Source of the DNA: Lytechinus pictus
Taxonomy: Eukaryota
Direction of reading: 5' to 3'
Length of the DNA stretch: 64,000 nt
Assembly: GCF_037042905.1 (NCBI RefSeq)
Contig: NC_087256.1
Coordinates: 9,424,001 to 9,488,000, forward strand
Under the pieces are notes generated by a model. The model searched no databases. It saw only the letters and a program-made list of their open reading frames with translations, and had not been told where the DNA came from. Shown one piece after another: positions 17,442 through 60,763 of the stretch (positions are counted from its first letter, which is position 1; every line of letters starts with the position of its first letter). The position numbers and the translations under genes were made by a program.

Positions 17442-18902
17442 TTAGGTATCAATGTCCATAATTCGTTTCTTCTGGGTTTCCTCCTGACACAGTCCAGTCC
17501 ACCAGTCATGGAAGTTTGGATGTTCATCCTGCCATGTATACTCGCCAGGTCTCAAAGACTTCTTGAGCAACGTCATGATAATGTAACACAACCTATCCCC
17601 AGTCTGGATACGAGTTGTCAGCATCGTAGAAGATTTCTCCACTCGACCGACTCTCCGCCATGCAAAGTATTCAAGGTACAGTTCATCGTTGCGATCCAGG
17701 AGATTGATGTAATCTACAAACTCCTGGACCGTCTTGAAGTCGTCAAAGTGGATGAAAGAATGAGGCGGCGCAAGACGTTCGTAATCTTTCTTCGGAGGTC
17801 CGTAGACTATTGGAACAGAACCTGTGAGAAGTGCATTGTACCAGAACTTTTCCGTGATGTACTCTGGACATTGGCTATTCTCCAAGGCGAGGTTGAATTT
17901 GTACTCCGATTGGATGGAATAACAGCCATTCGTGTAGCGAAGGCACTGCAAGCGTCCGCAAAGACCAAATGTATCAATGTCCAAGTACTTCTCCAACTCG
18001 TGTACAAATCTTGTCCTTCCCCAGCTGGTGTGATTGCAGTTAGATGACGCCCAATACATTAGTTTCTTCTTTCGAAGAACCATAGGACTTTTTTCTGAGT
18101 TGTGGGAATCCACGTAGTAATACGCCGGAGCAATATCTACACTCGACAGGTAGCTAATTGAAATATTATATGGATTCCCGAATTCTGGAGGTGGGTACTG
18201 TTCCGGGGTATGAATAGGTGCTTCTTTTGAGTGGAAAACCCAGAGTTGTCCCTTTGGCCGAGATTCAATAACCGACTTCCAATCCCGTTTTTCTGGAATG
18301 AGAAATACGACATCGCTCTCTTGAATGTCTTCGAGTGTGTCACCAACCTTGGTTTCAAAGTGGCAGTTTGAAAATTTGCAGTAAAATTTCGTCCATCTTT
18401 TGTTCTCTTCTTTGATCATTCGTTTACACATCTTCCTACATAATTGGAGAACTTTGATGACGCATGTGTTCGGGCTTTTGTGGTTCTGCCTCTGGCTTAC
18501 TGAGTTGTGTATCTTGTACAAGAGTCTGTTTTCCTGGAAAGTTACATTGTGCTTCATGCTTATCAAAGCATTTGCCAGCCATTTACTGTGCCTACCATCG
18601 TTCAGTTCCCCCTTAATCTCACGATTCGTTCTCTCAAATTTGAGGGCATCGGAACTGAGCTTGAGGTTCTTCAATATTGGAATATATTCATAATAATCAT
18701 GCCTGTCGTGGGAAGTCTGAACTTTCTCCGTATCACCTGCATCTCTCTCTTGTTCATTGGCAGTCAAACTATTTTGGTTGTATTGGAAATCGGCATGCGT
18801 TTTTCTTTGAGAGTAAGCTTCAATAGTTAGATGAAGAGCGATGACAAACATGACAACTCCGAATATCTTCAGTACTGTCCGCAGGGATATTAACTTCAGC
18901 AT
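17442..18902 (-). CDS. Alpha-1,3/4-fucosyltransferase (GT10), type II Golgi membrane protein, 486 aa
   Basis: Single open frame. N-terminal TM segment (IFGVVMFVIALHLTI), long stem, WVFHSKEAP, WASSNC, and the GT10 motif YKFNLALENSQCPEYITEKFWYNALLTGSVPIVYG...YERLAPPHSFIH...YFAWR. An acceptor tttgttccgtttgcag at ~18985 implies an upstream non-coding exon. Confidence 0.93.
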   Translation of the reverse strand: MLKLISLRTVLKIFGVVMFVIALHLTIEAYSQRKTHADFQYNQNSLTANEQERDAGDTEKVQTSHDRHDYYEYIPILKNLKLSSDALKFERTNREIKGELNDGRHSKWLANALISMKHNVTFQENRLLYKIHNSVSQRQNHKSPNTCVIKVLQLCRKMCKRMIKEENKRWTKFYCKFSNCHFETKVGDTLEDIQESDVVFLIPEKRDWKSVIESRPKGQLWVFHSKEAPIHTPEQYPPPEFGNPYNISISYLSSVDIAPAYYYVDSHNSEKSPMVLRKKKLMYWASSNCNHTSWGRTRFVHELEKYLDIDTFGLCGRLQCLRYTNGCYSIQSEYKFNLALENSQCPEYITEKFWYNALLTGSVPIVYGPPKKDYERLAPPHSFIHFDDFKTVQEFVDYINLLDRNDELYLEYFAWRRVGRVEKSSTMLTTRIQTGDRLCYIIMTLLKKSLRPGEYTWQDEHPNFHDWWTGLCQEETQKKRIMDIDT

Positions 18903-23529: not shown

Positions 23530-24409
23530 TCATAACTGAGATATCAGTTCGATAAGGTCCAAGAGCTTTATACGCGATAAAGGTTCCCTATACAGGCATT
23601 TCTCTCCTATATCTTTAAGATCATCGTTTCCTAAGTCATATCCCATAATGTAAATGAGTTGTCCAATCTGATACACATCACTCGCTCGGGTCGTCGCTGC
23701 GTTGTCAAATATCAATTCTGGTGCGTAGTGGATCGACAACGGATCCTCTTCATAATAATCTCTCTCGGTCTGCCCAAAGTCGTAGATCGCGGACAGGAGC
23801 GTCGTCGATGCATTACCCAGATCGATAAGGTACCCACTGAATAAGTCGTGGTCGGATTGTTTGACGATTACATTATCACCCTTGATGTCATTGTGCAAGA
23901 TGTCCATCGAGTGTAAGGCCTTCAAGGCAGAAAGGATATCAAGCATCACTGTCTTTGCGTGGTGGATGCTGACGTGTTCCTCTTGCGTCCATGTATTCAG
24001 AGTCCTCACCTTATACGTGCTATCATCACCTAGAAACTCCATTGCAATGGCAGTATTATTCCCGAGACTACCGACCCCGTACATGCGCGGAAATACGCCG
24101 GTGCCGGCGAAGAGTCTGATGAGGCGCGCTTCGAGGATGATCTCCTGCCGACGTACTTCGTAGTCGTCAGCGGTCGCGTGCAATATCTTCATCGCCACGG
24201 TCTTTCCTTGTCGTCCACGCTTCTGCCGGTAAGCGAAAACTCTCCCGAAGGCCCCTCCGCCAAGAGTGATGACAGAATTGGTCTTGTCAACGATAGGTTC
24301 GTATTTCTCGGCAATATTCACTTTCGCTAGGGGTGTAGTCTTTCTGAGTAATGCGAAATGAATTTCATTTAGGTCTTTGAACTGACAGTCCGCTGTGTCT
24401 TTCAAAAGT
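23530..24409 (-). CDS. Kinase-domain terminal exon of the gene above
   Basis: Recognisable kinase subdomains from the Gly loop to the subdomain XI Arg in one exon. Acceptor ttcttatttcag at 24410-24421; stop TGA at 23530. Confidence 0.9.
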
Positions 24410-26939
24410 CTGAAATAAGAAATATTAATAAGTGCATGTTTCAATGAAGCAGGACTGAAAAGCACACACGGAATTTAATAAAAAATAAATTCAACTGAAT
24501 ACTTAATGAAGCTCATTTCAAATTTATATGCAATTAAGTGTTTCTGTTTGTTTGACCGATTGATTGATTTTATACAATTAATTCGAATAACTATTCGTTT
24601 AAGTTTTGGCAAAGGTTGCCACAGGAAAAATAATATCTGTTGACTTCTTCCTAATTGGGAATCACTTAGAACACACACTGACCGTTAGTTTGGAAAGCCT
24701 CATTTTCATTTAATTTCATATATTTATTTTCCGACATAATACAAATAAACNNNNNNNNNNNNNNNNNNNNNNNNNNNNNNNNNNNNNNNNNNNNNNNNNN
24801 NNNNNNNNNNNNNNNNNNNNNNNNNNNNNNNNNNNNNNNNNNNNNNNNNNNNNNNNNNNNNNNNNNNNNNNNNNNNNNNNNNNNNNNNNNNNNNNNNNNN
24901 NNNNNGAGTTCTCGTTCCAATTTTTCCTTTGCTTTAGTGGCTTCATGCCAGGAAACCTCTAGGAACCTATTGTGAAGTAGATATAACAGTATAATGTGAC
25001 TACATAATTTATATTGAAACTATTTTTAAGGATAGGACAATGAAGCATCACTAAAATAGAATCGGGGGTTCATTTTCTTAGGATTGCCTTGTCGAAGAAA
25101 TTATACCTATTAAAAACAAGCGAATTAAAAAAAAACAATACATACATGCAATCCTACACATTTTTAAAATTCTATCATCTGCCAAAAAGAAGCAGAACGC
25201 TCATCGAGCATCTATATCATTATTGATTTTAAAATGAATAAAAGTGTTACGATCATTCGATGGTCTGCCGGAGTTTGGAAGTCGCAAAGAATTGTATGAC
25301 ATGATCCATAATACTCACTCGTTGTCTTCTTCCTTTTCTTGTACTTTCAGAAGAGCTTCTTCAAGATCGGTCTTGTATTTAGAATTCTCTTCCTTCAGGG
25401 GAAATCAGGACAAGAAAATAACGATTAAGTTACGTTAATATCGGAGACTTTAACTAAAACGATTCTGTTGAAAATTCGGAAAAAGTTTTTATTTTTGCAG
25501 AGCTCTTTACGAGTATCAGTGCATGTCATTGAGGAAGTATGTATGAAGGAAACCATACCAAGTCATTTTGTGAGGCAATTCCCTGAACCAACTACAATCT
25601 GATAATTCCATTCTTTTGCATCATGATGTGATGGTTCATTCTTACCCCTACATTCCATTGAACTAAAGAACTACATGTGTTACTACCCACCACTGTTGTT
25701 ATTAGAGAGTTTTCGCAGTTACCAAGAGAAATGATTCTAGAACATATTAAATGCTTTAAAACTACCCGTCAAATCACAATAAACAGCTGAGAGGTCTTTG
25801 TCGAAAATTGGATCGTCGTAAAATTCGAAGCTGACGAAAAATTGCAAATATATCGTTAGTCCAGAGTCAATGAAGAAACTGCTGTCTTGATTCACCAAAT
25901 TCCGACAAAGACTGCTTTGTCATGAAGGGATATTGACAATAGATTATGTACATTCCAGAAAGCGTCTGCGTAGTGTTGCGAAATAAAAATCCTTATTATT
26001 TCAACTAGTACGACACTCTAATGAACACCAGTGATGATTGATATTGAAGACAATGACGACGATGATAACAATGATAATAATATTTTTAAAATGATATGAT
26101 AACAATGATTATAATGGTAATGATTAAAATAATACAATTACCGTCATCATAAAGTAGTATTAGTGACAATTATAATATACACTAGAAAATTTATCCTTAA
26201 AATAAAATAAGTTCCTGCAGCAGAGTCTCGAGAACACCTGTAATCTTACCAGTTGGTGTATGTAACATTACAAATTTCCTTAAATAAAACACCCTTTTCC
26301 CCTTTTTAAACAGACCTGTTCTGTTAAATTGCAGAAAATTCCTGTCTTATGAATTTACAGAATGATTCTGTTATTGCTTTCTGCAAAATCTTTTTTTTGT
26401 TTTCTGTAAAATCATGGTTTTTTAACAGTGTATAGGGGGATAAAACAAAAAACATACATTGAAATACGGAAATACAATAAAAAATCATACTATATAAGCT
26501 TACGAAAGAGTAGTAATTCCTTTCGCGAATAACAAATATAAGTAATTCCGTCTTTGTAGTGCTACTTTAATCGGACAAAGGAAATTACATTGTCACACAA
26601 ATTGAAAAGAAATATTAAATAGGGAATGATTTTTACCTCCAGGGTGACAAGCATTTCCCTCATCCTGACAAGCATATCTGACATCCGTTTGATCTTCTTC
26701 TCAACTTCTCGCTGTTAAATGAAATTGGAAAAACAACAACATCCTTATTATCATTCAGGTAGACTCAAATACACTTCACATTCAACATAAATTACTGCAT
26801 AGGCATATTTGTTATTTTTTCGTGTTTGAAAGTTGTCTGTATATTTTTCTTTGTTAATTTCTGTATCAAGTTGATCTGTAAATGTTTTCCTTCGAGACTA
26901 TGTTTATCCTTAATTGCTATTTCGATTGTTAAATTTTCT

Positions 26940-47581: not shown

Positions 47582-49610
47582 ATGGGAACCAATGCTATCA
47601 ACTTCACTAAAAGTGACATCGACGATCTTGATCCCCAAGATGGAACGGTCTTCGAAGACTATGGCTTCGATATCAAACAGAGAATCGGAATCTCAGTGGT
47701 TTACAGTCTAATTGCATTAACGGGAATAGCAGGTATGGAACAACCTTAGTTTAGAATCTATCGACAATTTACATACAAAAATAGTTTCCTCTTATTCATC
47801 TATTATTCTATTCGGTTTTCATTCCGTCGTAATTAGACCGACAGTACATGTATATCAAATAAAAAAATAAGGTAATCAAATAAGAATTACAGGTTTTGAG
47901 GAGAAAGAGAGAGAGAGAGGGGGGTGCAAGGGGGGGGGGGTTAAGAGAGGGGGCAGACGGATAGAGAGATATATAGGGTGATAGAAGAAAAAGACAGAGA
48001 AAGAGAGAGAGAATGAGAGAGAGAGAGGGAGAGAGAGTATCTACCTATGTCCTCCATAGAGGCATGACTTAAGTGACACAAAAATGATACGTCTGACAGA
48101 AAAGGTGCGGGTATAACCATTAGTAACTAATCAGGTTCTATAGTTAATGAGCACGAATCCTTTCGATCAAAACTGTCCCCTTCAACCAATTTCGAATTTT
48201 GAATAGGAGGTTATCAATGGTTTTCTCTTTTAGGGCTATAGGTCTAATAACTTGAAATTATTATTGGTAGTGGGTGTGGGCATATTGTCTTTTCCACCAT
48301 TGTCATTCATATATCGTGAGACCAGAGTACACAATTCCTATTTTAGATGCCTCACTTCGCTAGGAACAGTGCAATTGGTAATTCGTCACGACATAATTTT
48401 TTCCGTAATAGAATACTTTGAACCATATATCATAACAGCTGTCTCTCGAAAAGAAAGCTAGAGACAATGATCTCTTATTTACATTAGCATTTAACTGGGT
48501 ATCTATTCGTTCGTGTATCATAATGTAAGTAAATGCAAGCAATTCTTTATACTATCATCCATCCTTCTCATATTTCAATCCACAGGAAATGCTTGTGTCT
48601 TCATGGCAGTTCTTCTTTCAAAGAAGCTCCACACGCTAACAAACATCCTTGTGGTAAATCTCAGTATCACAGATTTCCTGGCATGCTGCAGTATTCTTGT
48701 CCAAAGTGTAGTTCTTGTGACATCAGACAAGTTCCTCAAGGTAGTTCCTACTCAGCTTTGCGTCCTAGCCGGTGCAGTCAACTTCGTGGGTGTGTCTAAC
48801 AGTCTCATGACGCTAACGCTGATAGCCTTTATGCGGTGGTATGTCATTACCCGCAGCATCAGAGGCCAAAGAGGACTCCATACTCCTGGAAAGGTAGCAG
48901 CGTTAATAATCATCACTTGGATATTCTCGTTGGTGTCCATGATACTGCCACCGGCACTTGGGCTAGGAACTCTAGGGTACAGCGCGGCCTACCATCAATG
49001 CTTGACGATCGACGAAAACAAACTCGTAGCGTACCTTAGTATGTTGCAGAGCGGTGGATGTCTTACCTTTGTCGCAGTTGCTCTTTCTTTCTACATCGCC
49101 ATATATCTGTTCGTTCGAAAGAATACCAGGGCTTTTTCGTTAAGGCTTAGCAGAACTGAAGAAATCCAGAACGTACATGAATCAAGAACAAACATAGAGC
49201 TAGATGAAGTGAAAGATTGTCATGAACAAAGATTGAAGCAAAGCGAACAACGTCGTCAAATGGATGCCCTATTTCGGGATCGAGAGTGGAGGATCACGAA
49301 GAATCTTCTTGTTGTATTCTGCATATTCTTAATTTGTTTCATCCCATTCGCCGTAACCCTTGCAATACCCGGAGGAAGCCTCTCCAATGTCTACACAACT
49401 GCGTTGTTGTATTTAAACGCTTGTATCAACCCTGTTGTGTACTGTCTGAAACATGACCAATTCAAGGAGGTACTGAGGCCCATGTTACGGTGCAGGTGGT
49501 CAAACATTCCACAACCTACCAAGCTTCTCAGACTCTGTTTCCATCGGTCAGATCGCGTTTTGCAGTCTCCCACTACTACTTCCACTAGTGCACTGATAAA
49601 AAGAATGTGA
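47582..49610 (+). CDS. Rhodopsin-like (class A) orphan GPCR, paralog 1 (~391 aa, 2 exons)
   Basis: Exon 1 47582-47732 (gccATGG; MGTNAINFTK...KQRIGISVVYSLIALTGIAG) spliced in phase 1 to exon 2 48586-49610. GN in TM1, NLSITD in TM2, AFMRW at the DRY position, W in TM4, CFIP in TM6, NPVVY in TM7, helix 8 FKEVL. Confidence 0.92.
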
Positions 49611-53145: not shown

Positions 53146-55048
53146 ATGGCGGCTAACAGCACTGACCTGAATACCTGGTATACTGCCAGTCAGGAATGGA
53201 CTCATGAAACAGCAAGTGAGGAGTACGCCTTTGATTTCAAACAGAGGATAGGCGTTTCTGTTATTTACTGTCTCATTGTGTTAGTAGGTGTCACAGGNNN
53301 NNNNNNNNNNNNNNNNNNNNNNNNNNNNNNNNNNNNNNNNNNNNNNNNNNNNNNNNNNNNNNNNNNNNNNNNNNNNNNNNNNNNNNNNNNNNNNNNNNNN
53401 NNNNNNNNNNNNNNNNNNNNNNNNNNNNNNNNNNNNNNNNNNNNNNNNNNNNNNNNNNNGAGTGCAGCTCTGGGGAACTCTGATGCTAAGCTGACCATTA
53501 TTCTCTTTCCTCATTTTTTCCACAACATATCTGAATAAAAAGAGTTGGCAAATTGACTTCAAAATGTATGTTTGTATTTTTTGGACGGAAAATCAATAAA
53601 AAATAATATAATCTAGATTTGATAACAGGAAAGTTTATCATTCCTTGAAAAAAAATAAATGACCCTTCAAAAATTTAAATTTGAATACTTTGGTGGGTGC
53701 ATGACGTGATATGCTTTCTTATTTGGATATCGGCCGTTATTATGCTTATCGCAGTTTAGAAAATAAACGTAATTTAGACATCTTATATCAGTTTTAAAGA
53801 ATATTTCTTTGTTGTTCTTGCATTATTCCAATTGTCTTTATATTCAACAAAAATACTTTCAGCAGACTTGAAGTTTAAAGAATGATTTTTGAAAAAACAT
53901 TGCCCTCTAGGCTAAATATTTTTAAATGAGTGTATTTGTTAACAAAAAATAGCTTGGCATTCATGACGAGAACAATCTTCTTGACTTTTGAAACAGGAAA
54001 TGCTTGCGTCATCTTGGCTGTACTGTTCTCAAGAAAGCTTCACACCCCCACCAACATCCTGGTGGTAAATCTCAGTGTAACCGACTTTATTACCTGTTGG
54101 TCTCTTCTCATCCAAATCGTCGTTCTCTTGAACTCAGACCATGTCCTCAGGTTGGTTCCGCGTCCTCTGTGCCTCCTGGCTAGCGGAGTCACCTTCGTAG
54201 GAACTACCTGTAGTCTGATGACGCTGACACTGATTGCCTTCATGCGTTGGTACGTCATAACCCACAGCATCAGAGGTCATACAGGACTCCACACTACTAG
54301 GAAGGTTGCAACAATGGTAGTTTTTGTGTGGACTACCTCGTTGATCGTATCATTGCTTCCACCCGGTCTAGGAATAGGAACCCTGGGTTATAGTATCACC
54401 TATAAGCAATGTTGTACCGTAGATGATAATCTTATAGTCAAATATTACAGCATGGTGCAAGGCTGCGGGTCCTTCATCCTTGTGATGCTTGCCGTTTACT
54501 TTTACACTTCTATATTCTTATTCGTTTGCAAGAATGACAGGAAGTTTACACAGAGGTTTAGCCATGGGAACGACTCATGTCGTGTCAATGAATTAAACTC
54601 TGACTTAAAGGAAGGATCTAAGACAGAGGGGGATACACATTTTCCCACTCGCAGTCTTTCCTATATGGTGGAAAATGGGCATCATCAACAAGATCAAAGC
54701 GAGACAGAGCGTCGAATGGTGGAGCAATTTAGGAAGCGGGAGATAAAGTTGACAAAGAACTTATTTGTGGTGTTCTTCATTTTTGTGGTGTGTTTAGTTC
54801 CTTTCTCCATAAGCCTTGCCATTCCTGGTGGAAGCATCGTCAATATCTACTTCGCTGTCGTGGTATATTGTAACTCCTGTGTCAATCCCTTAATATACTG
54901 CCTAAAACACGACCAGTTCAAAGAGGTTTTGAGGCCATTGTTGAGATGCAGGTGGTCCAAAATTCCGCAGCCCACACAATTCATCAGGCACCTGTTTCCT
55001 TCAGATCAACATTCAGAAATTAGCAACATTTATTCATTATCAGGATAA
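53146..55048 (+). CDS. Rhodopsin-like (class A) orphan GPCR, paralog 2 (~400 aa, 2 exons)
   Basis: Exon 1 53146-53296 (gccATGG; MAANSTDLN...KQRIGVSVIYCLIVLVGVTG; 151 nt as in paralog 1; donor cut off by the N gap). Exon 2 53997-55048 with GNACV, NLSVTD, AFMRW, CLVP, NPLIY. Confidence 0.9.
53298..53459. other. Assembly gap (N run)
   Basis: Run of n inside the GPCR2 intron. Confidence 1.
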
Positions 55049-55913
55049 ATATTGTCGCAAACAATCATTCATCTGTCACCCACGTATGATGCAAACATGA
55101 TTTACTTCACCAGGCTTAGATTGATTTCTGACTTGAAATCCTTAAAGCTTCGATGACCGGTTTGCCAAGTTGATCTTCAAGATTTTATTTTCTTATTTTT
55201 TTGATGGGACAAAATATCAATGTTAAGATATTTAGACTTCAATTATCGTTAAAACAGGAATAAATGTTGTTTGGTATAAAATCCATTAGTAAAGAAACAA
55301 AAGTACTCAACATATTGTACACATGGAAGTGGATATCAACACATTATAAATGTAGACTGTAGTTGATTGAAGAATTTGTATTATCCCATCTCAAAAATAC
55401 CATAGTTAACTCAATTTAACGAATAGTCTTGAGAAGGAAGTAAGACGAATGTGAAATTTGTAGGCATAGTTTATTTTCGCATATACATGAAGTTGCGTTG
55501 AAACTGTAGAAAATATTCAATAAAATGTTTAACATGGCACATAAGGTAAAGCATAAAACAAAGTAGCACTAAAACTTTCTTTCATTGTTGATTTCTAGCT
55601 GTATTTGCGTCTTGTTTCAAATTCTACACCAACTATATATACTCATTACTTAGCTAATGATCTGAATGTTAAAAAATATGTTGAATGGGACTATCATAAA
55701 GGAATGTTTACTTAGAAAGGAACAACATGGAATGAGATGGAGGCTTATAGCTTTATTTTGCAATGCATATAAAATGTATATTAATTAGTTGATTTATATT
55801 AATAGATAGATAATTATAATTTTTTAACTTTATAATATATATAAAAAAAGAGTTTTTCGTTTGTAAATGTTAACGTAGTGCGCTAATGCACAATTCATAA
55901 ATTAGCATGAAAA

Positions 55914-58900
55914 TCAGGATTCATTGGGGACATAGAGAAGAAGATTTTCGGAATCGTGCAACTCGGTGACTTTGTCTCTGCTAGCTGTTTCTAGGATGAC
56001 GTCACGAACTTCATTTGGTGATAGGTCAGGATTCAAGCCAAGATGGACTGCAACAACACCTGCCAAAATGAGAAGTTCAACCAATATGAATTGGTGTTAG
56101 TAGTAAAGTGTTAGTGGAAAGTAAGACAAATCGGGCTCTTTCTCTTAATAGCCTTTCCATATGGAAGAGGGTAGCCGACAAATGCCAGTGACAGCCATCT
56201 CTGTCTTCTTTTTGACGTACGTAATTCTTGATATCAAAATTGATTTACCGATATATAGGCAACAGACCTAATAGCTTTTCAAGTTATAGGAAAACATTCA
56301 AATATAAGTAATACCACTGAAATGAGAGTGGATTTCAATTCTTTTGAACATGTGCATACAACAGAGTCTGATTCCACCTGGTAGCGGAGGTGATTTATTT
56401 CCCCCAAGAAAGTTAGGATGCTTGTAAGCAAACAACCAGGGAACGGAAGGCTCGAGACCCTCTCTGTTGGACCTCTTGTATTGAGGACATGTGTCTTATC
56501 AAAGGAAACCAGCGCACCAAGTGAGAATGAAACCTCGGCCAACGGATTGATTAGAAAGTCAAGGGTGATTATAATACAAAAGTTATAATTCAAGATTTTA
56601 AATCATTTATAACGAACCTGCTACATGAGGACATGCCATGCTGGTTCCGCTCAGCGATCGATATCCGTCGTCAGATCGGTAGTCTGCGCTCAGAATGCGA
56701 TGCCCGGGAGCAAAGATATCCACGCATGCGCCCCAGTTTGAAAAGTAGACCCTGGCATCGTCATCCTGGATCGCACCGACTGTGATTGCCTTTAGAATTG
56801 AAACAAACAAAATATGATAATTATTTTTATGTGATTATAAGATTAATTACACTCTAGAAACAAATCAGTCAAAATGACTAGTTAATAGGGTCAGCTGGGT
56901 GCAGCTGTTATTCTAGTCATATTTGACTATTTTCTAGTCGTATTTTACAAGAGCAGAGTTATTTCTGACTAGAATATTAATTTGTCAGAAATGTGACTGT
57001 CATATCAGTTGCACCCAGGTGACTACTTGTCTAGTCAATTTGACTGATTTGTTTTAAGAGTGTAGGCAATCTAGCAATATAGATTTGTAATATTTCCCCT
57101 GAATGAGTCGTTGATAATCAATTACTATTCCTCCACACAATCTACTGTTCCCTGTATGGAGTAAGATAATTGACCTATGTGTTTATCACTTTTTTAGGAC
57201 GGTTCCCTTTTATTACACCTTCTAAGCTCCGTAGTTTATCATCTGCCATAATAAACAATCGGCAAATCAATTAGGATGGTTCTCTTGATCTTGAGGAATC
57301 ATAACAGTTGATTTTAGAGGTCTAGGCAACTTTGAAAAAAAAATTGTTCTTAGATATGGAGGAAACATGAAGAAGATCTTTCAACAATACCTCAGGTGCT
57401 CTGGCGGGAGAAGCGCGGCATGCATCGTAGTCGCTATTACCAGCCGCTACCACCACCGTCACACCTGCCCTGTGAAGGTTTCCCAGTGACTCGTCTACAG
57501 AACGAAGTCCACCGCCTCCAAGAGACATGCTAGCAACGGCTGGACGAATACCATTGACGGCAACCCAGTCCATACCTAAAGGGACAGTGTAAACAAATGA
57601 GTAACTGACTTGGAAAATAGGGAAAGAGCGAGATATAGAGAGTAAGCAAACTGAACTTGAGGTGATTGTGTAAAAACTTATAAACAACAATCGATGACCA
57701 TTTTAGAGTCGACATACAAGTCATGTCGATCCGTCACAGAGCTTTCGATTTACATGACAGATGTTTCTACGACCATAAAATGACCATAACCATCTGCACA
57801 TTTGAAATTTCGTCGGATCCTCCCGTTTTACAACTGTTTCCGGGATGAATCGACGCTACGAGGCGTTTTGCTGAAAACGACAACATAATAAAGAGTTTTT
57901 GGGTCACGTGATAATGTTTTCAATGCGTCAATGCGAGTAAGTCTTCATCCTAAAAATCTAAAAAAAAAAAATCCCCAGTGTATCATCCGAAGCAGATTAG
58001 TCTTCGGAGTTGGGAAGACGTGCCTTTGGTTCATCGTGACGCGAAAAATCTCCGTAACTTGAAGGACATGTAGTAGTCAACTTGAAGAGGGAAATCATTG
58101 GACTTCTGTGCAATAATGCACTTTAATTGATATGGTATAAAATACTGACCATCGATAATGGCAGACCACGAGCCGTATCCATAACATCCAAGAACCCGCA
58201 CGGCATATACTTTGGCGGCCTTGGCAACCCCGTATCGTTTGCCTGCGATTGTACCTGCACAATGAGTGCCATGTCCCTGGCAGTCACCTTCGTTCCCCTG
58301 CCGATCAAGAATATAAGTTGTCGGTATGAATAGAGAAAGCATCCTATATTTTGTGGGTAAATTACCCAACACTCACCGTCAATGACCGCTGACCATGACC
58401 CAGACCCATAACAACCAAGAACCCGTACGGCGTAGACTTTAGCAGCTTTGGCAACTCCGTACCGTTTACCTGCGATCGTGCCGGCACAGTGGGTCCCATG
58501 CCCTTGACAATCACCATCGTTGCCCTGTCATTTATGGAAGAGTGGATATTTTCGGTTATGACCTTTAGACAAACTCACCATCGATTACAGATGATGATGA
58601 ACCGGACCCGTAACACCCAAGAACTCTGACGGCATACACCTTTGCACCCTTGGCCACACCGTACCTTTTACCCGCTATAGTCCCTGCACAGTGAGTCCCG
58701 TGACCTTGACAATCGCCATCATTACCCTATTATAGAATAGTCATGATATCCATTGATGTTATTTATGTCGACGTAATTTCAGTAACACGTTTGGACATAC
58801 TGAATAACAATCCTGGAATTTTAAATAAAAAAATGCCGATCTTTAGTATCGAATGGTTCTAGCCGCATCCTGACCATGGTATTTTCTATGTAGTTTGAAA

Positions 58901-60604
58901 AAGTTGAAGATCTATGTGAATTACCCCCCCCCCTCTATATTTTAGATAATAATTCACCTCAAGGAAACTGACTTTATGTTTATTATATCATTTCCTGAAA
59001 TGAATTTTTTCTGGAACATAATTTTTTCTAGAATCTTTATCAACTCTTAAGACATGAAAGATGTCTATGATATATAAGGTACTTACGATAGCGTAGTTCA
59101 TGGCGTCATAGACGAATTCTGCTCTGCCCTCAAAGTCCTCATGGGTTGTTCTGATTCCAGTATCAAGGACGTATACATTCACACCGCTGCCATTACCTAT
59201 CAAGATTATATGGTTATGGAGGAGTCAGTAAAAAATACACCAAACAAAATACAACGCAGCGATCTTACCACCGATGTTTATCATGAACATCAAGGAATAA
59301 AAGTAATGTCGAACATGATTTTTTGAAATGTTTGGCAACAAAAACAACAGCTACCCATCCCAGACTGGTATAATAAGAAAACCTGCAGACATCAAGGTAA
59401 TTTTGAATCATTTCAAAACGACAATGAAAGATTGAATGGGTATATCTTACCGACTGGAGTATAACTATCATCGAGAGGAAGATCTCTTTGGTTGATCCTG
59501 TCAAGTCCCCAGATCTCTGTAGTGTGTGCTAGGCCATCTTCTTCCACGTACTTCACAGAGGGGTGGGCTCGCACCTGTGTTGGTTAGGGTGTGCGTGGGA
59601 GTGTGAGTGTGTGTGTGGGGATGTAAGTGGATTGGGTGAGCGTGTATGTGTGTAAGTACGGATTTGTGCGTGGCAAAAAATACAGGTAAGTGTGTGTGGG
59701 GGTAGGGGTGGGTGAATATAAGGGTGACAGAGTGTTTGGGGTGTGTGGAGGGAGAAACAGTCAGAGAGTGTGTGTGAGAGAGATGTAGAGCTTCGATGTA
59801 AGGCAAAGTCGTTATTCTTTTTATGCTTCATACCTCGCTTCCTGTCATTAATTATTTTGCATCTGTGCCAAAAAAGGGGTGTGTGGGTTGAATTCATTGC
59901 AACAATGATTTAAAATTTCATGTGCCAGTCTAACAGGAAAAAATACATTATTATTATTGAAATGCTACCCATTGAGAGGGTTAAAAGCGCAACATGACCT
60001 GTTTTGTTTTGCCAATGTTCAAGCATTTTGGCCTAAATGATTGATTATGTTTCAGTTTAAATTGATGAAATATATAACAAAAACTCTTACCACTGCTAAG
60101 GCCTCCTTTGATAAAGATATTGCAAATCCATTGAGGACTCTGTTGTACTCTTTCAGAGGGTTGTTAAATGTTATACTTTTCAGCCGGGATTCTTCATGAA
60201 GAGATTGTAGAACGTTTGGAAGCACAGCATTCCTCTGCCAGGTGAAAGACAATTTTATAGATTTATCAAATCAGATTTACATAATTTCAAATGATAATCG
60301 TGCTTTTATACATTTCAATTTTTTCGGTAAAAAGTCACCCAGATACTAATAACATATTCTCAATAAGGTATATGATTGTTCTAATATCCGAACGACACAA
60401 AAAGAGACTATCTAATAATCTAATATTATGCTTTTCGTCTACTTATCGGAAATACTTATATATTTCCCCAGTACTTACCTTCAGGACTACGATGTACTGC
60501 TCCTTAATGGCTTCTCGTGTTTTGAATAAAGGAGCTCGACGAGCCGCCACAACCGCACCAGATAGCAAGATGGAGAATGAGAGGATGGAGACAATGCACC
60601 GCAT
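55914..60604 (-). CDS. Secreted subtilisin-like serine protease, S8A proteinase K/aqualysin type, paralog 3 (~384 aa; exon 5 present in three alternative copies)
   Basis: Exons in transcript order: 60479-60604, 60091-60234, 59451-59574, 59087-59196, [58579-58726 | 58377-58524 | 58150-58297], 57391-57575, 56618-56789, 55914-56059. Same phases as paralogs 1 and 2. Signal peptide [20 protein letters not shown]; [55 protein letters not shown]; ends [10 protein letters not shown]. Confidence 0.93.
56848..57064. mobile_element. TA|CACT...AGTG|TA palindromic MITE in intron 6 of protease 3
   Basis: tacactctagaaacaaatcagtcaaaatgactag ... ctagtcaatttgactgatttgttttaagagtgta. Confidence 0.8.
58150..58297 (-). 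CDS. Protease 3 alternative exon 5C (catalytic His exon)
   Basis: cggcag|[50 protein letters not shown]|gtcagt; 148 nt, phase 0 in, phase 1 out. Confidence 0.9.
58377..58524 (-). CDS. Protease 3 alternative exon 5B (catalytic His exon)
   Basis: tgacag|[50 protein letters not shown]|gtgagt; 148 nt, phase 0 in, phase 1 out; absent from the ORF track. Confidence 0.9.
58579..58726 (-). CDS. Protease 3 alternative exon 5A (catalytic His exon)
   Basis: taatag|[50 protein letters not shown]|gtgagt; 148 nt, phase 0 in, phase 1 out; absent from the ORF track. Confidence 0.9.
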
Positions 60605-60763
60605 GATTGACGTCATCGGGTTAATCTATATAATATTAATGAATAAAATGTTGATGAAGTTAGTAACAAAGAGTACTAAAAATCATTCGAGACATGGATT
60701 CTTCCATATATTATCGATCAGGTATCTGTGTACAGGTTGTTGGATGGTCTTCTCCAATTGTTT

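What the first reader, a model, noticed from the sequence alone, without database searches (positions are those of the whole stretch)
58150..58726. Three tandem copies of the catalytic-histidine exon: a candidate mutually exclusive exon cassette in a subtilisin-family protease
Seen in sequence: between exon 4 (catalytic Asp) and exon 6 of minus-strand protease 3 there are three intact paralogous exons, 5A 58579-58726, 5B 58377-58524 and 5C 58150-58297. Each is exactly 148 nt, with an AG acceptor, a good donor (gtgagt, gtgagt, gtcagt) and the same phase (0 in, 1 out). Each encodes [12 protein letters not shown]...VRVLGC. No other exon of the gene is repeated, and I found only one such exon in each of the two paralogous genes. 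The ORF track shows only 5C. Established: same-length, same-phase tandem exon paralogs are the hallmark of mutually exclusive splicing (Dscam, myosin heavy chain, pyruvate kinase M). Inference: one gene yields three enzymes that differ only in the active-site segment. I do not know of a described case in an S8A protease but cannot search the literature.
Basis: partly seen in the sequence, partly recalled or inferred. Interest (0 to 1): 0.92.

Follow-up and report, generated by a model that had tools for sequence, protein, structure and literature searches.

The report
Three alternative catalytic-histidine exons in protease
A secreted proteinase-K-like protease gene of a probable echinoderm carries three tandem copies of the exon that encodes its catalytic histidine, and RNA reads show that each mRNA uses exactly one, giving three enzymes that differ mainly at the pocket binding the substrate's fourth residue (P4).

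Summary

- **Exons.** Exons 5A, 5B and 5C are each 148 nt, with AG acceptors and GT donors. They are 72-78% identical in DNA and identical at 43-46 of 49 residues.
- **RNA evidence.** Raw RNA-seq reads join exon 4 and exon 6 to each copy. On the exon-6 side the counts are 58 (5A), 135 (5B) and 21 (5C). No copy-to-copy joint was listed. Transcript contigs from two other studies show the same three forms.
- **Frame.** Any double or triple inclusion puts a stop four codons into the second copy.
- **Conservation.** Genomic contigs of a related species carry the same triplet. Orthologous copies show dS 0.6-1.0 and dN about 0.01, and keep the copy-specific residues.
- **Where the copies differ.** By ungapped alignment to proteinase K, four of the six variable positions are residues 101, 104, 106 and 107, in the S4 substrate-pocket segment. 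Altered P4 specificity is inferred from this, not tested.
- **How exclusivity may be kept.** The likely causes are the very short inner introns (54 and 79 nt) together with frameshift and mRNA decay. A scan for docking/selector RNA pairing was negative.
- **Elsewhere in the genome.** A distant paralog independently carries two such exons.
- **Prior reports.** No paper describing this in a subtilase was found. The scan had noted other candidate mutually exclusive exon clusters in this genome (an ADAMTS protease, an anoctamin), but not this one.

Verdict: a well-supported new member of a known kind.

The parts
60479..60616 (-). Exon 1: start codon and signal-peptide-like N-terminus. The real start may be the second ATG at 60604.
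   Evidence: ORF and tblastn model. The joint 60479/60234 is supported by 246 reads in X21. Organism B transcripts change codon 3 to a stop, so Met5 is probably the start.
60091..60234 (-). Exon 2: inhibitor I9-like propeptide.
   Evidence: Pfam PF05922 at E=0.0036, below the curated cut-off for this single-exon piece. Spliced joints.
59451..59574 (-). Exon 3: end of the propeptide and start of the mature enzyme.
   Evidence: Gene model and joints.
59087..59196 (-). Exon 4: catalytic Asp (motif VYVLDTGI). It is the constitutive upstream partner of the cluster.
   Evidence: Pfam PF00082 positions 1-26. Joined to 5A, 5B and 5C in RNA.
58579..58726 (-). Exon 5A. Proteinase K numbering: His69; S101, S104, S106, V107, G87. 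About 21-27% of junction reads.
   Evidence: Its ortholog in the related species is 89% identical in DNA, with dN 0.009 and dS 0.63.
58525..58578 (-). Intron between 5A and 5B, 54 nt (71 nt in the relative). Too short to leave about 50 nt between the 5' splice site and a branch point.
   Evidence: Steric threshold from PMC7969005.
58377..58524 (-). Exon 5B: S101, W104, A106, V107, A87. The major form, about 54-70% of usage.
   Evidence: Ortholog 89% identical in DNA, with dN 0.009 and dS 0.64.
58298..58376 (-). Intron between 5B and 5C, 79 nt (75 nt in the relative).
58150..58297 (-). Exon 5C: Y101, W104, A106, I107, A87. Minor form, about 9-23% of usage. Its GTCAGT donor matches that of the single-copy neighbour gene.
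   Evidence: Ortholog 85% identical in DNA, with dN 0.018 and dS 0.98.
57391..57575 (-). Exon 6: oxyanion Asn region (motif AAGNS). It is the constitutive downstream partner of the cluster.
   Evidence: Pfam PF00082 positions 110-166. Joined to all three copies.
56618..56789 (-). Exon 7: catalytic Ser (motif [11 protein letters not shown]).
   Evidence: Pfam PF00082 positions 173-247, E=3e-10. Joints.
55914..56059 (-). Exon 8: C-terminus and stop codon.
   Evidence: Gene model and joints.

Best explanation
This is a genuine cluster of three mutually exclusive exons in a secreted proteinase-K-type (S8A) preproprotease gene.

**Shown**
- Each mRNA carries exactly one of 5A, 5B or 5C between exon 4 (catalytic Asp) and exon 6.
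- All three are used in the same sample, with 5B dominant.
- All three copies and their copy-specific residues are kept by strong purifying selection in two species.

**Inferred**
- The cassette holds the catalytic His, a probable internal disulfide (positions equivalent to aqualysin Cys67-Cys99), and the 100-107 strand that forms one wall, the lid (104) and the floor (107) of the S4 pocket.
- The three isoenzymes therefore probably share chemistry but differ in P4 preference or in fit to inhibitors: S104 gives an open pocket in 5A, W104 a bulky lid in 5B, and W104 plus Y101 and I107 in 5C.
- Exclusivity is most likely kept in two ways. The 54- and 79-nt inner introns are too short for a donor and the next branch point to be engaged together. 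Any double, triple or zero inclusion shifts the frame (148 nt), with a stop four codons into the second copy, so stray products would be removed by nonsense-mediated decay.
For: - **Anatomy.** Three 148-nt, same-phase exons with AG/GT sites. The ORF is intact only with one copy, and a stop follows 4 codons into a second copy.
- **RNA.** X21 raw reads give e6-5A/5B/5C 58/135/21 and 5A/5B/5C-e4 32/105/13. Introns have zero depth and no 5x-5y joint is listed. X1 and X10 contigs hold all three forms, at depths 124.8/321/106.5 and 8.4/20.1/8.7.
- **Selection.** Between copies dS is saturated and dN is 0.03-0.06. Between the window and the related species, each copy has dS 0.63-0.98 and dN 0.009-0.018. 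All 11 listed differences of organism B in the three exons are synonymous.
- **Conserved anatomy in the relative.** 148 nt each, the same splice sites, and inner introns of 71 and 75 nt.
- **Mapping.** Ungapped alignment places exon positions 5-48 on proteinase K 65-108 and positions 1-48 on aqualysin 62-109. Segment 100-104 and residue 107 form S4, and 104 is its lid (PMC5374539, PMC1890553). Four of the 6 variable positions fall in the last 9 residues (P=0.007, post hoc).
- **Introns.** The inner introns are 54 and 79 nt against 244-601 nt for all others in the gene. The steric threshold is about 50 nt (PMC7969005).
Against: - Four low-support joints in the read-laying output were not displayed, so rare double inclusion or skipping cannot be excluded.
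- The isoform ratios are similar in the three runs examined, so there is no evidence yet of regulated switching.
- The amino-acid differences are few, and no activity data or structural model was obtained.
- Inner introns of 71-79 nt might be spliceable in this animal. Its minimal intron size is unknown to me, so steric hindrance is firm only for the 54-nt intron.
- Branch points and nonsense-mediated decay were not tested.
Confidence: 0.85

Rival explanations
1. All three exons are spliced in mutually exclusively, but the isoenzymes do not differ in substrate specificity. The conserved differences would instead serve folding with or release from the propeptide, stability, resistance to endogenous or pathogen inhibitors, or RNA-level splicing control.
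For: Only 3-6 residue differences separate the copies. Usage ratios are similar across three runs. In modelling work the 107 Val/Ile change is regarded as minor (PMC1890553).
Against: Position 104, the S4 lid, changes from Ser to Trp and position 101 from Ser to Tyr, which are large changes. Both are conserved per copy across dS of about 0.6-1.0. The differences cluster in the 100-107 strand.
Confidence: 0.25
2. Exclusivity is enforced by competing RNA secondary structures of the Dscam type (a docking site and selector sequences), not by steric hindrance plus mRNA decay.
For: Clusters with more than two variants often use this mechanism (general knowledge). The downstream intron holds a short block conserved between the two species, with core CCTCTTCAAGT.
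Against: A duplex scan of both flanking introns against the three selector zones gave nothing beyond shuffled controls in either species, and the best windows are not conserved. The inner introns leave little room for selectors.
Confidence: 0.1
3. The triplication is an assembly artefact, or two of the copies are unused pseudo-exons.
For: None found.
Against: The copies are 22-28% divergent, which is not the pattern of a collapse or expansion error. Independent Logan contigs from five runs of another species show the same tandem order. Each copy has spliced reads to both neighbours and dN/dS of about 0.015.
Confidence: 0.01

Closest known systems
Mutually exclusive exon pairs and clusters derived from tandem exon duplication (pyruvate kinase M exons 9/10, OGDH exons 4a/4b, alpha-tropomyosin exons 2/3, SNAP25 exon 5, Dscam clusters)
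   Same: Tandem homologous exons of equal length and phase, with exactly one per mRNA. A short intervening intron and frame disruption guard exclusivity, as in OGDH and tropomyosin (PMC7969005). In PKM and OGDH, as here, an enzyme's functional segment is swapped.
   Different: The host gene is a subtilase and the swapped segment includes a catalytic-triad residue plus a specificity pocket wall. There are three variants rather than two. No docking/selector signal of the Dscam kind was found.
Insect serpin-1-type genes with alternative exons encoding the reactive-centre loop (for example PpSerpin-1, PMC10513286)
   Same: Specificity in a protease system is diversified within one gene by swapping the exon that carries the specificity determinant. 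Exon duplication and gene duplication act side by side in the same family.
   Different: Those genes encode inhibitors, not proteases. There the alternative exons are the last coding exon, whereas here they are internal and flanked by constitutive exons on both sides.
Proteinase K / aqualysin-type S8A subtilases (PDB 1IC6, 4DZT)
   Same: These are the best PDB matches of the cassette, at E 4e-15 to 1e-10 and ungapped. The gene has the D-H-S motifs, an I9-type propeptide and Cys positions matching aqualysin 67/99.
   Different: This is an animal gene with seven intron positions, one of roughly 50 paralogs in the genome. Its S4 segment is supplied in three alternative versions.
Engineered S4-pocket variants of subtilisin BPN' and related enzymes (positions 104 and 107)
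   Same: The same positions that protein engineers and modellers treat as P4 determinants (PMC1890553) are those that differ between the natural cassettes.
   Different: This is natural and heritable, and the choice is made at splicing. The effect on specificity has not been measured.

Membership tests
Mutually exclusive exon (MXE) cluster | Two or more adjacent homologous exons of the same length and phase, each with its own splice sites | tested here: met
   Three 148-nt exons, phase 0 in and 1 out, AG acceptors and GT donors. nhmmer finds exactly three copies in the gene.
Mutually exclusive exon (MXE) cluster | Each variant is spliced to both flanking constitutive exons in mature RNA | tested here: met
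   joints e6-5A/5B/5C with 58/135/21 reads and 5A/5B/5C-e4 with 32/105/13 reads in X21. The same joints appear in X1 and X10 contigs.
Mutually exclusive exon (MXE) cluster | Transcripts with two variants or none are absent or rare | tested here: met
   No 5x-5y or e4-e6 joint is among the 15 listed joints, against 214 e6-side junction reads. Caveat: four weaker joints were not displayed.
Mutually exclusive exon (MXE) cluster | The reading frame is preserved only with exactly one variant | tested here: met
   148 nt is not a multiple of 3. The AB, BC, AC and ABC combinations all hit a stop 4 codons into the second copy.
Steric-hindrance type MXE (alpha-tropomyosin / OGDH) | The distance from the 5' splice site to the branch point in the intervening intron is below about 50 nt | tested here: inconclusive
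   The 54-nt intron A-B cannot reach 50 nt. The 79-nt B-C intron and the 71/75-nt introns of the relative are borderline. Branch points were not mapped. Threshold from PMC7969005.
Docking-site/selector (competing RNA structure) MXE, Dscam type | One intronic docking sequence complementary to a selector next to every variant, conserved across species | tested here: not met
   The RNAduplex scan gave nothing better than shuffled controls in the window or in the relative.
U2/U12 spliceosome-incompatibility MXE | Variants flanked by introns of different spliceosome types | tested here: not met
   All donors are GT[GC]AGT U2-type and all acceptors are AG.
Peptidase S8A, proteinase K subfamily | Subtilase domain with Asp, His and Ser motifs in that order plus the oxyanion Asn | tested here: met
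   PF00082 matches on exons 4, 5, 6 and 7 at consecutive profile positions. Motifs DTG, GHGTH, AAGN and GTSMA in the 388-aa model.
Peptidase S8A, proteinase K subfamily | Closest solved relatives are proteinase K / aqualysin-type enzymes | tested here: met
   The top PDB hits of the cassette are aqualysin-1, a keratinase, the Vibrio/Serratia proteinase-K-like enzymes and proteinase K. PCSK9 and the bacillar subtilisins score lower.
Peptidase S8A, proteinase K subfamily | N-terminal inhibitor I9 propeptide | tested here: inconclusive
   PF05922 at E=0.0036 and 18.4 bits, below the 21.2-bit cut-off, when exon 2 is scanned alone. The whole spliced protein could not be submitted by reference.
Peptidase S8A, proteinase K subfamily | Proteolytic activity | not testable with these tools
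   Needs expression and assay.

The most novel reading that the evidence does not exclude
The three cassettes yield isoenzymes with distinct P4 (S4-pocket) specificity or distinct inhibitor escape, deployed differently by tissue or condition. Duplication of the His/S4 exon would then be a recurrent route to diversify subtilase specificity without duplicating the gene, since it arose independently at least twice in this expanded family. As far as I could find, this would be the first natural case of active-site cassette swapping by splicing in a subtilase.
Probability: 0.45. Interest if true: 0.65.

Novelty: new member of a known kind. Interest (0 to 1): 0.5.

Why it matters
- **Natural cassette mutagenesis.** Evolution has kept three versions of the strand that forms the S4 pocket, at positions 101, 104, 106 and 107, on an otherwise identical enzyme. 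Expressing the three forms would give a clean natural test of how these positions set P4 preference in proteinase-K-type enzymes.
- **Splicing versus gene duplication.** Within one expanded gene family, alternative splicing and gene duplication are used side by side for the same purpose.
- **A compact splicing model.** The cluster has three exons, 54- and 79-nt inner introns and no detectable docking site. It is a small system for studying how exclusivity is enforced outside insects and vertebrates.
- **Annotation.** Gene predictors will report only one isoform, or a frameshifted gene, unless the cluster is recognised.

Tried and rejected
1. Searches used window:58377-58523:-, which is the wrong frame of 5B. 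By luck its hit P0001, a wrong-frame ORF on a Logan contig, led to the related species' genomic contigs.
2. **Full-length protein work.** Searches for annotated isoforms, a structure prediction and deeper orthologs were not possible, because the spliced 388-aa protein has no reference and I did not type it. The 'open_frame_aa' values of the genome search did not correspond to real long ORFs.
3. **Fragment searches.** Searches with 5B, the 5C ORF and the L003 copy gave only the neighbour-gene ortholog L009, a single-copy paralog from another run (L011), a fungal-type proteinase K on a metagenome contig (L012) and a contig without DNA (P0005). None extends the phylogenetic depth.
4. **Docking/selector RNA pairing.** Rejected.
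5. **U12-type incompatibility.** Rejected from the donor sequences.
6. **Tree of the exon copies.** Only the 5A ortholog pair and the L003 pair are supported. The order of the duplications and their timing relative to the neighbour gene are unresolved.
7. **Decayed extra copies.** None found in the neighbour gene or the window paralogs.
8. **Literature.** No report of mutually exclusive exons in a subtilase. The library lacks most subscription journals, so absence is not proof.

Full report
**Observation**

On the minus strand, three 148-nt segments lie at 58726-58579 (5A), 58524-58377 (5B) and 58297-58150 (5C). They form one direct-repeat family. Each is preceded by AG and followed by GTGAGT, GTGAGT and GTCAGT respectively, and each translates in the same phase to 49 residues carrying GHGTH. 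They share 72-78% of nucleotides and 43-46 of 49 residues, with 28-29 codons differing synonymously and only 3-6 non-synonymously.

Together with exons at 60616-60479, 60234-60091, 59574-59451, 59196-59087, 57575-57391, 56789-56618 and 56059-55914, any single copy gives a 1167-nt ORF of 388 aa. Every double or triple inclusion runs into a stop four codons into the second copy. The pieces match Pfam Peptidase_S8 at consecutive profile positions, and exon 2 weakly matches Inhibitor_I9. The two paralogs inside the window have one His exon each, and no decayed copies were found.

**Are all three used, and one at a time?**

The single read-laying run laid two raw RNA-seq runs and two sets of transcript contigs on 55800-60700.

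- **X21 (raw reads, organism B).** Depth is confined to exons. Exon 6 is joined to 5A, 5B and 5C by 58, 135 and 21 reads, and exon 4 by 32, 105 and 13 reads. These are about 21-27%, 63-70% and 9-10%.
- **The 5B-exon 4 joint.** It is listed with five 'letters between'. These are two synonymous differences of organism B in the first two codons of 5B, so the junction itself is the canonical one.
- **X1 (organism A) and X10 (organism B, another study).** Each holds separate contigs for all three forms, with exon 4 and exon 6 sequence on their ends, at depths 124.8/321/106.5 and 8.4/20.1/8.7.
- **Missing joints.** No joint between two copies and no exon 4-exon 6 joint is among the 15 shown. Four weaker joints were not printed, so rare aberrant forms cannot be excluded.
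- **X31 (organism A, rRNA-depleted).** It has no reads on the gene, so expression is not ubiquitous.
- **Index search.** X1 holds 0.22 of the words of the whole gene but 0.60 of those of the 577-nt cluster.

**Conservation**

A wrong-frame query of mine returned a 62-aa ORF (P0001). Its Logan contigs L004-L008, from five runs of one study, are genomic DNA of a related species. They carry the end of exon 4, then 5A, 5B, 5C, exon 6 and part of exon 7.

- Each copy is again 148 nt with AG/GT sites, including the GTCAGT donor of 5C. The inner introns are 71 and 75 nt.
- The long flanking introns no longer align.
- Orthologous copies are 85-89% identical and paralogous ones 72-81%, so the triplication predates the split of the two species.
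- Nei-Gojobori estimates give dS 0.63, 0.64 and 0.98 and dN 0.009, 0.009 and 0.018 for the three orthologous pairs. Synonymous sites are saturated between copies.
- All 11 listed differences of organism B within the three exons are synonymous.

Each copy is therefore individually under strong purifying selection.

**What differs**

phmmer against the PDB aligns the cassette without gaps to aqualysin-1 (positions 1-48 = residues 62-109, E 4e-15) and to proteinase K (positions 5-48 = residues 65-108, E 1e-10). Exon position n therefore corresponds to proteinase K residue n+60.

- The catalytic His is His69.
- The two Cys residues kept in all copies fall at aqualysin positions 67 and 99. That these form a disulfide in aqualysin is from my own knowledge.
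- The six variable positions are 63, 87, 101, 104, 106 and 107:

| Position | 5A | 5B | 5C |
|---|---|---|---|
| 101 | S | S | Y |
| 104 | S | W | W |
| 106 | S | A | A |
| 107 | V | V | I |

- Positions 101, 104, 106 and 107 are all conserved per copy in the relative.
- In proteinase-K-type enzymes the segment 100-104 pairs with the substrate's P4-P1 strand. S4 lies between 100-104 and 132-136/137, residue 104 is its flexible lid and residue 107 its floor (PMC5374539; PMC1890553).
- Four of the six variable positions fall in the last nine residues (P=0.007, post hoc).

The inference is three isoenzymes with the same chemistry but different S4 pockets. It was not tested, and no structure could be predicted because the spliced protein has no reference.

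**How exclusivity is kept (inferred)**

- The inner introns are 54 and 79 nt, against 244-601 nt for every other intron of the gene. They are also short in the relative.
- A distance of about 50 nt between the 5' splice site and the branch point is regarded as the steric minimum (PMC7969005). The 54-nt intron cannot provide it, and the others are borderline.
- Joining 5A to 5C is not sterically blocked. It, like skipping or any multiple inclusion, shifts the frame into an early stop, so nonsense-mediated decay is the expected back-up.
- A scan for a docking site pairing with a selector at each variant gave nothing above shuffled controls in either species.
- All donors are U2-type.

**Family context**

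- The window is G000:C12:9424001-9488000 of an 812-Mb assembly. The genome has at least 53 His-exon matches, so this is a large proteinase-K-like family.
- A neighbouring intronless GPCR points to an echinoderm. This is a lead only.
- The nearest paralog lies just beyond the window's end (L002). It has the same eight-exon plan and a single His exon with a GTCAGT donor. Its ortholog in the relative (L009) is also single-copy and is closest to 5C.
- A more distant paralog (L003, G000:C12 at about 16.44 Mb) has two intact 148-nt His exons 742 nt apart. They are each other's closest relatives (support 97/96), with dN 0.09 and saturated dS. This is an independent duplication of the same exon, and it has not been checked with RNA.

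**Comparison with what is known**

The mechanism class, mutually exclusive exons born by tandem exon duplication, is well known (PKM, OGDH, tropomyosin, Dscam). The nearest functional analogy is the insect serpin-1 genes, which swap the reactive-centre-loop exon (PMC10513286). Full-text searches found no report of mutually exclusive exons in a subtilase or in echinoderm proteinase-K-like genes. The library is incomplete, and I could not check whether public annotation already lists the isoforms. The scan's own notes list other candidate clusters in this genome, an ADAMTS protease and an anoctamin, but not this one.

**Verdict**

This is a new member of a known kind. It is of moderate interest, mainly as a natural S4-pocket cassette experiment and as a compact model of mutually exclusive splicing.

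Noticed in passing
L003:5809-6846 (= G000:C12:16441809-16442846, minus strand): A distant paralog of the protease has two intact 148-nt His exons with AG/GT sites, 72% identical in DNA, 742 nt apart. A stop follows 2 codons into the second copy if both are included. The two copies group together in the tree (97/96), so this is an independent duplication and a second candidate mutually exclusive pair. No RNA check was possible.
   Followed up: partly
window 58640-58642, 58438-58440, 58211-58213 (codon 29 of 5A, 5B, 5C) versus L004 copies: Codon 29 (proteinase K position 89) is Lys (AAG/AAA/AAA) in all three copies of the window and Arg (AGA) in all three copies of the related species, while the surrounding synonymous differences between copies are kept. 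This is either a parallel change driven by the shared rest of the protein or a very short gene-conversion tract.
   Followed up: partly
L002:2596-7670 (G000:C12:9488596-9493670, just beyond the window's end, minus strand): A fourth tandem proteinase-K-like gene with the same eight-exon plan and a single His exon (92% residue identity to 5B, GTCAGT donor). Together with the two plus-strand paralogs in the window it forms a local gene cluster.
   Followed up: yes
window 60602-60616: Organism B transcripts differ at 60605, 60606, 60609 and 60611, so that codon 3 after the first ATG becomes a stop. The conserved start is therefore probably the second ATG (60604), which leaves a typical signal-peptide-like N-terminus.
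   Followed up: partly
window 56784-57111 (intron between exons 6 and 7): RNA depth here is far above that of the gene in some runs (X10 up to about 2500), and X31 has reads only here. There are many loose ends and indels. This looks like a dispersed repeat or transposon fragment transcribed from elsewhere, not part of the protease mRNA.
   Followed up: no
L005:501-650 versus L004:502-649: In the related species, position 87 of 5A is Gly in four runs and Asn in one, an apparent polymorphism at one of the copy-variable positions.
   Followed up: no
window 17442-18902, 23530-24465, 48513-49610, 53930-55048: Long intronless ORFs lie between the protease genes. The one at 53930-55048 resembles rhodopsin-type GPCRs, and its best Atlas cluster is mostly echinoderm. 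The scan's notes mention GPCR paralogs nearby.
   Followed up: partly
window 59590-59800 (intron 2 of the protease): A CA-rich, low-complexity tract (CACACA... and ACCC motifs) that yields spurious ORFs and a spurious tblastn extension.
   Followed up: no
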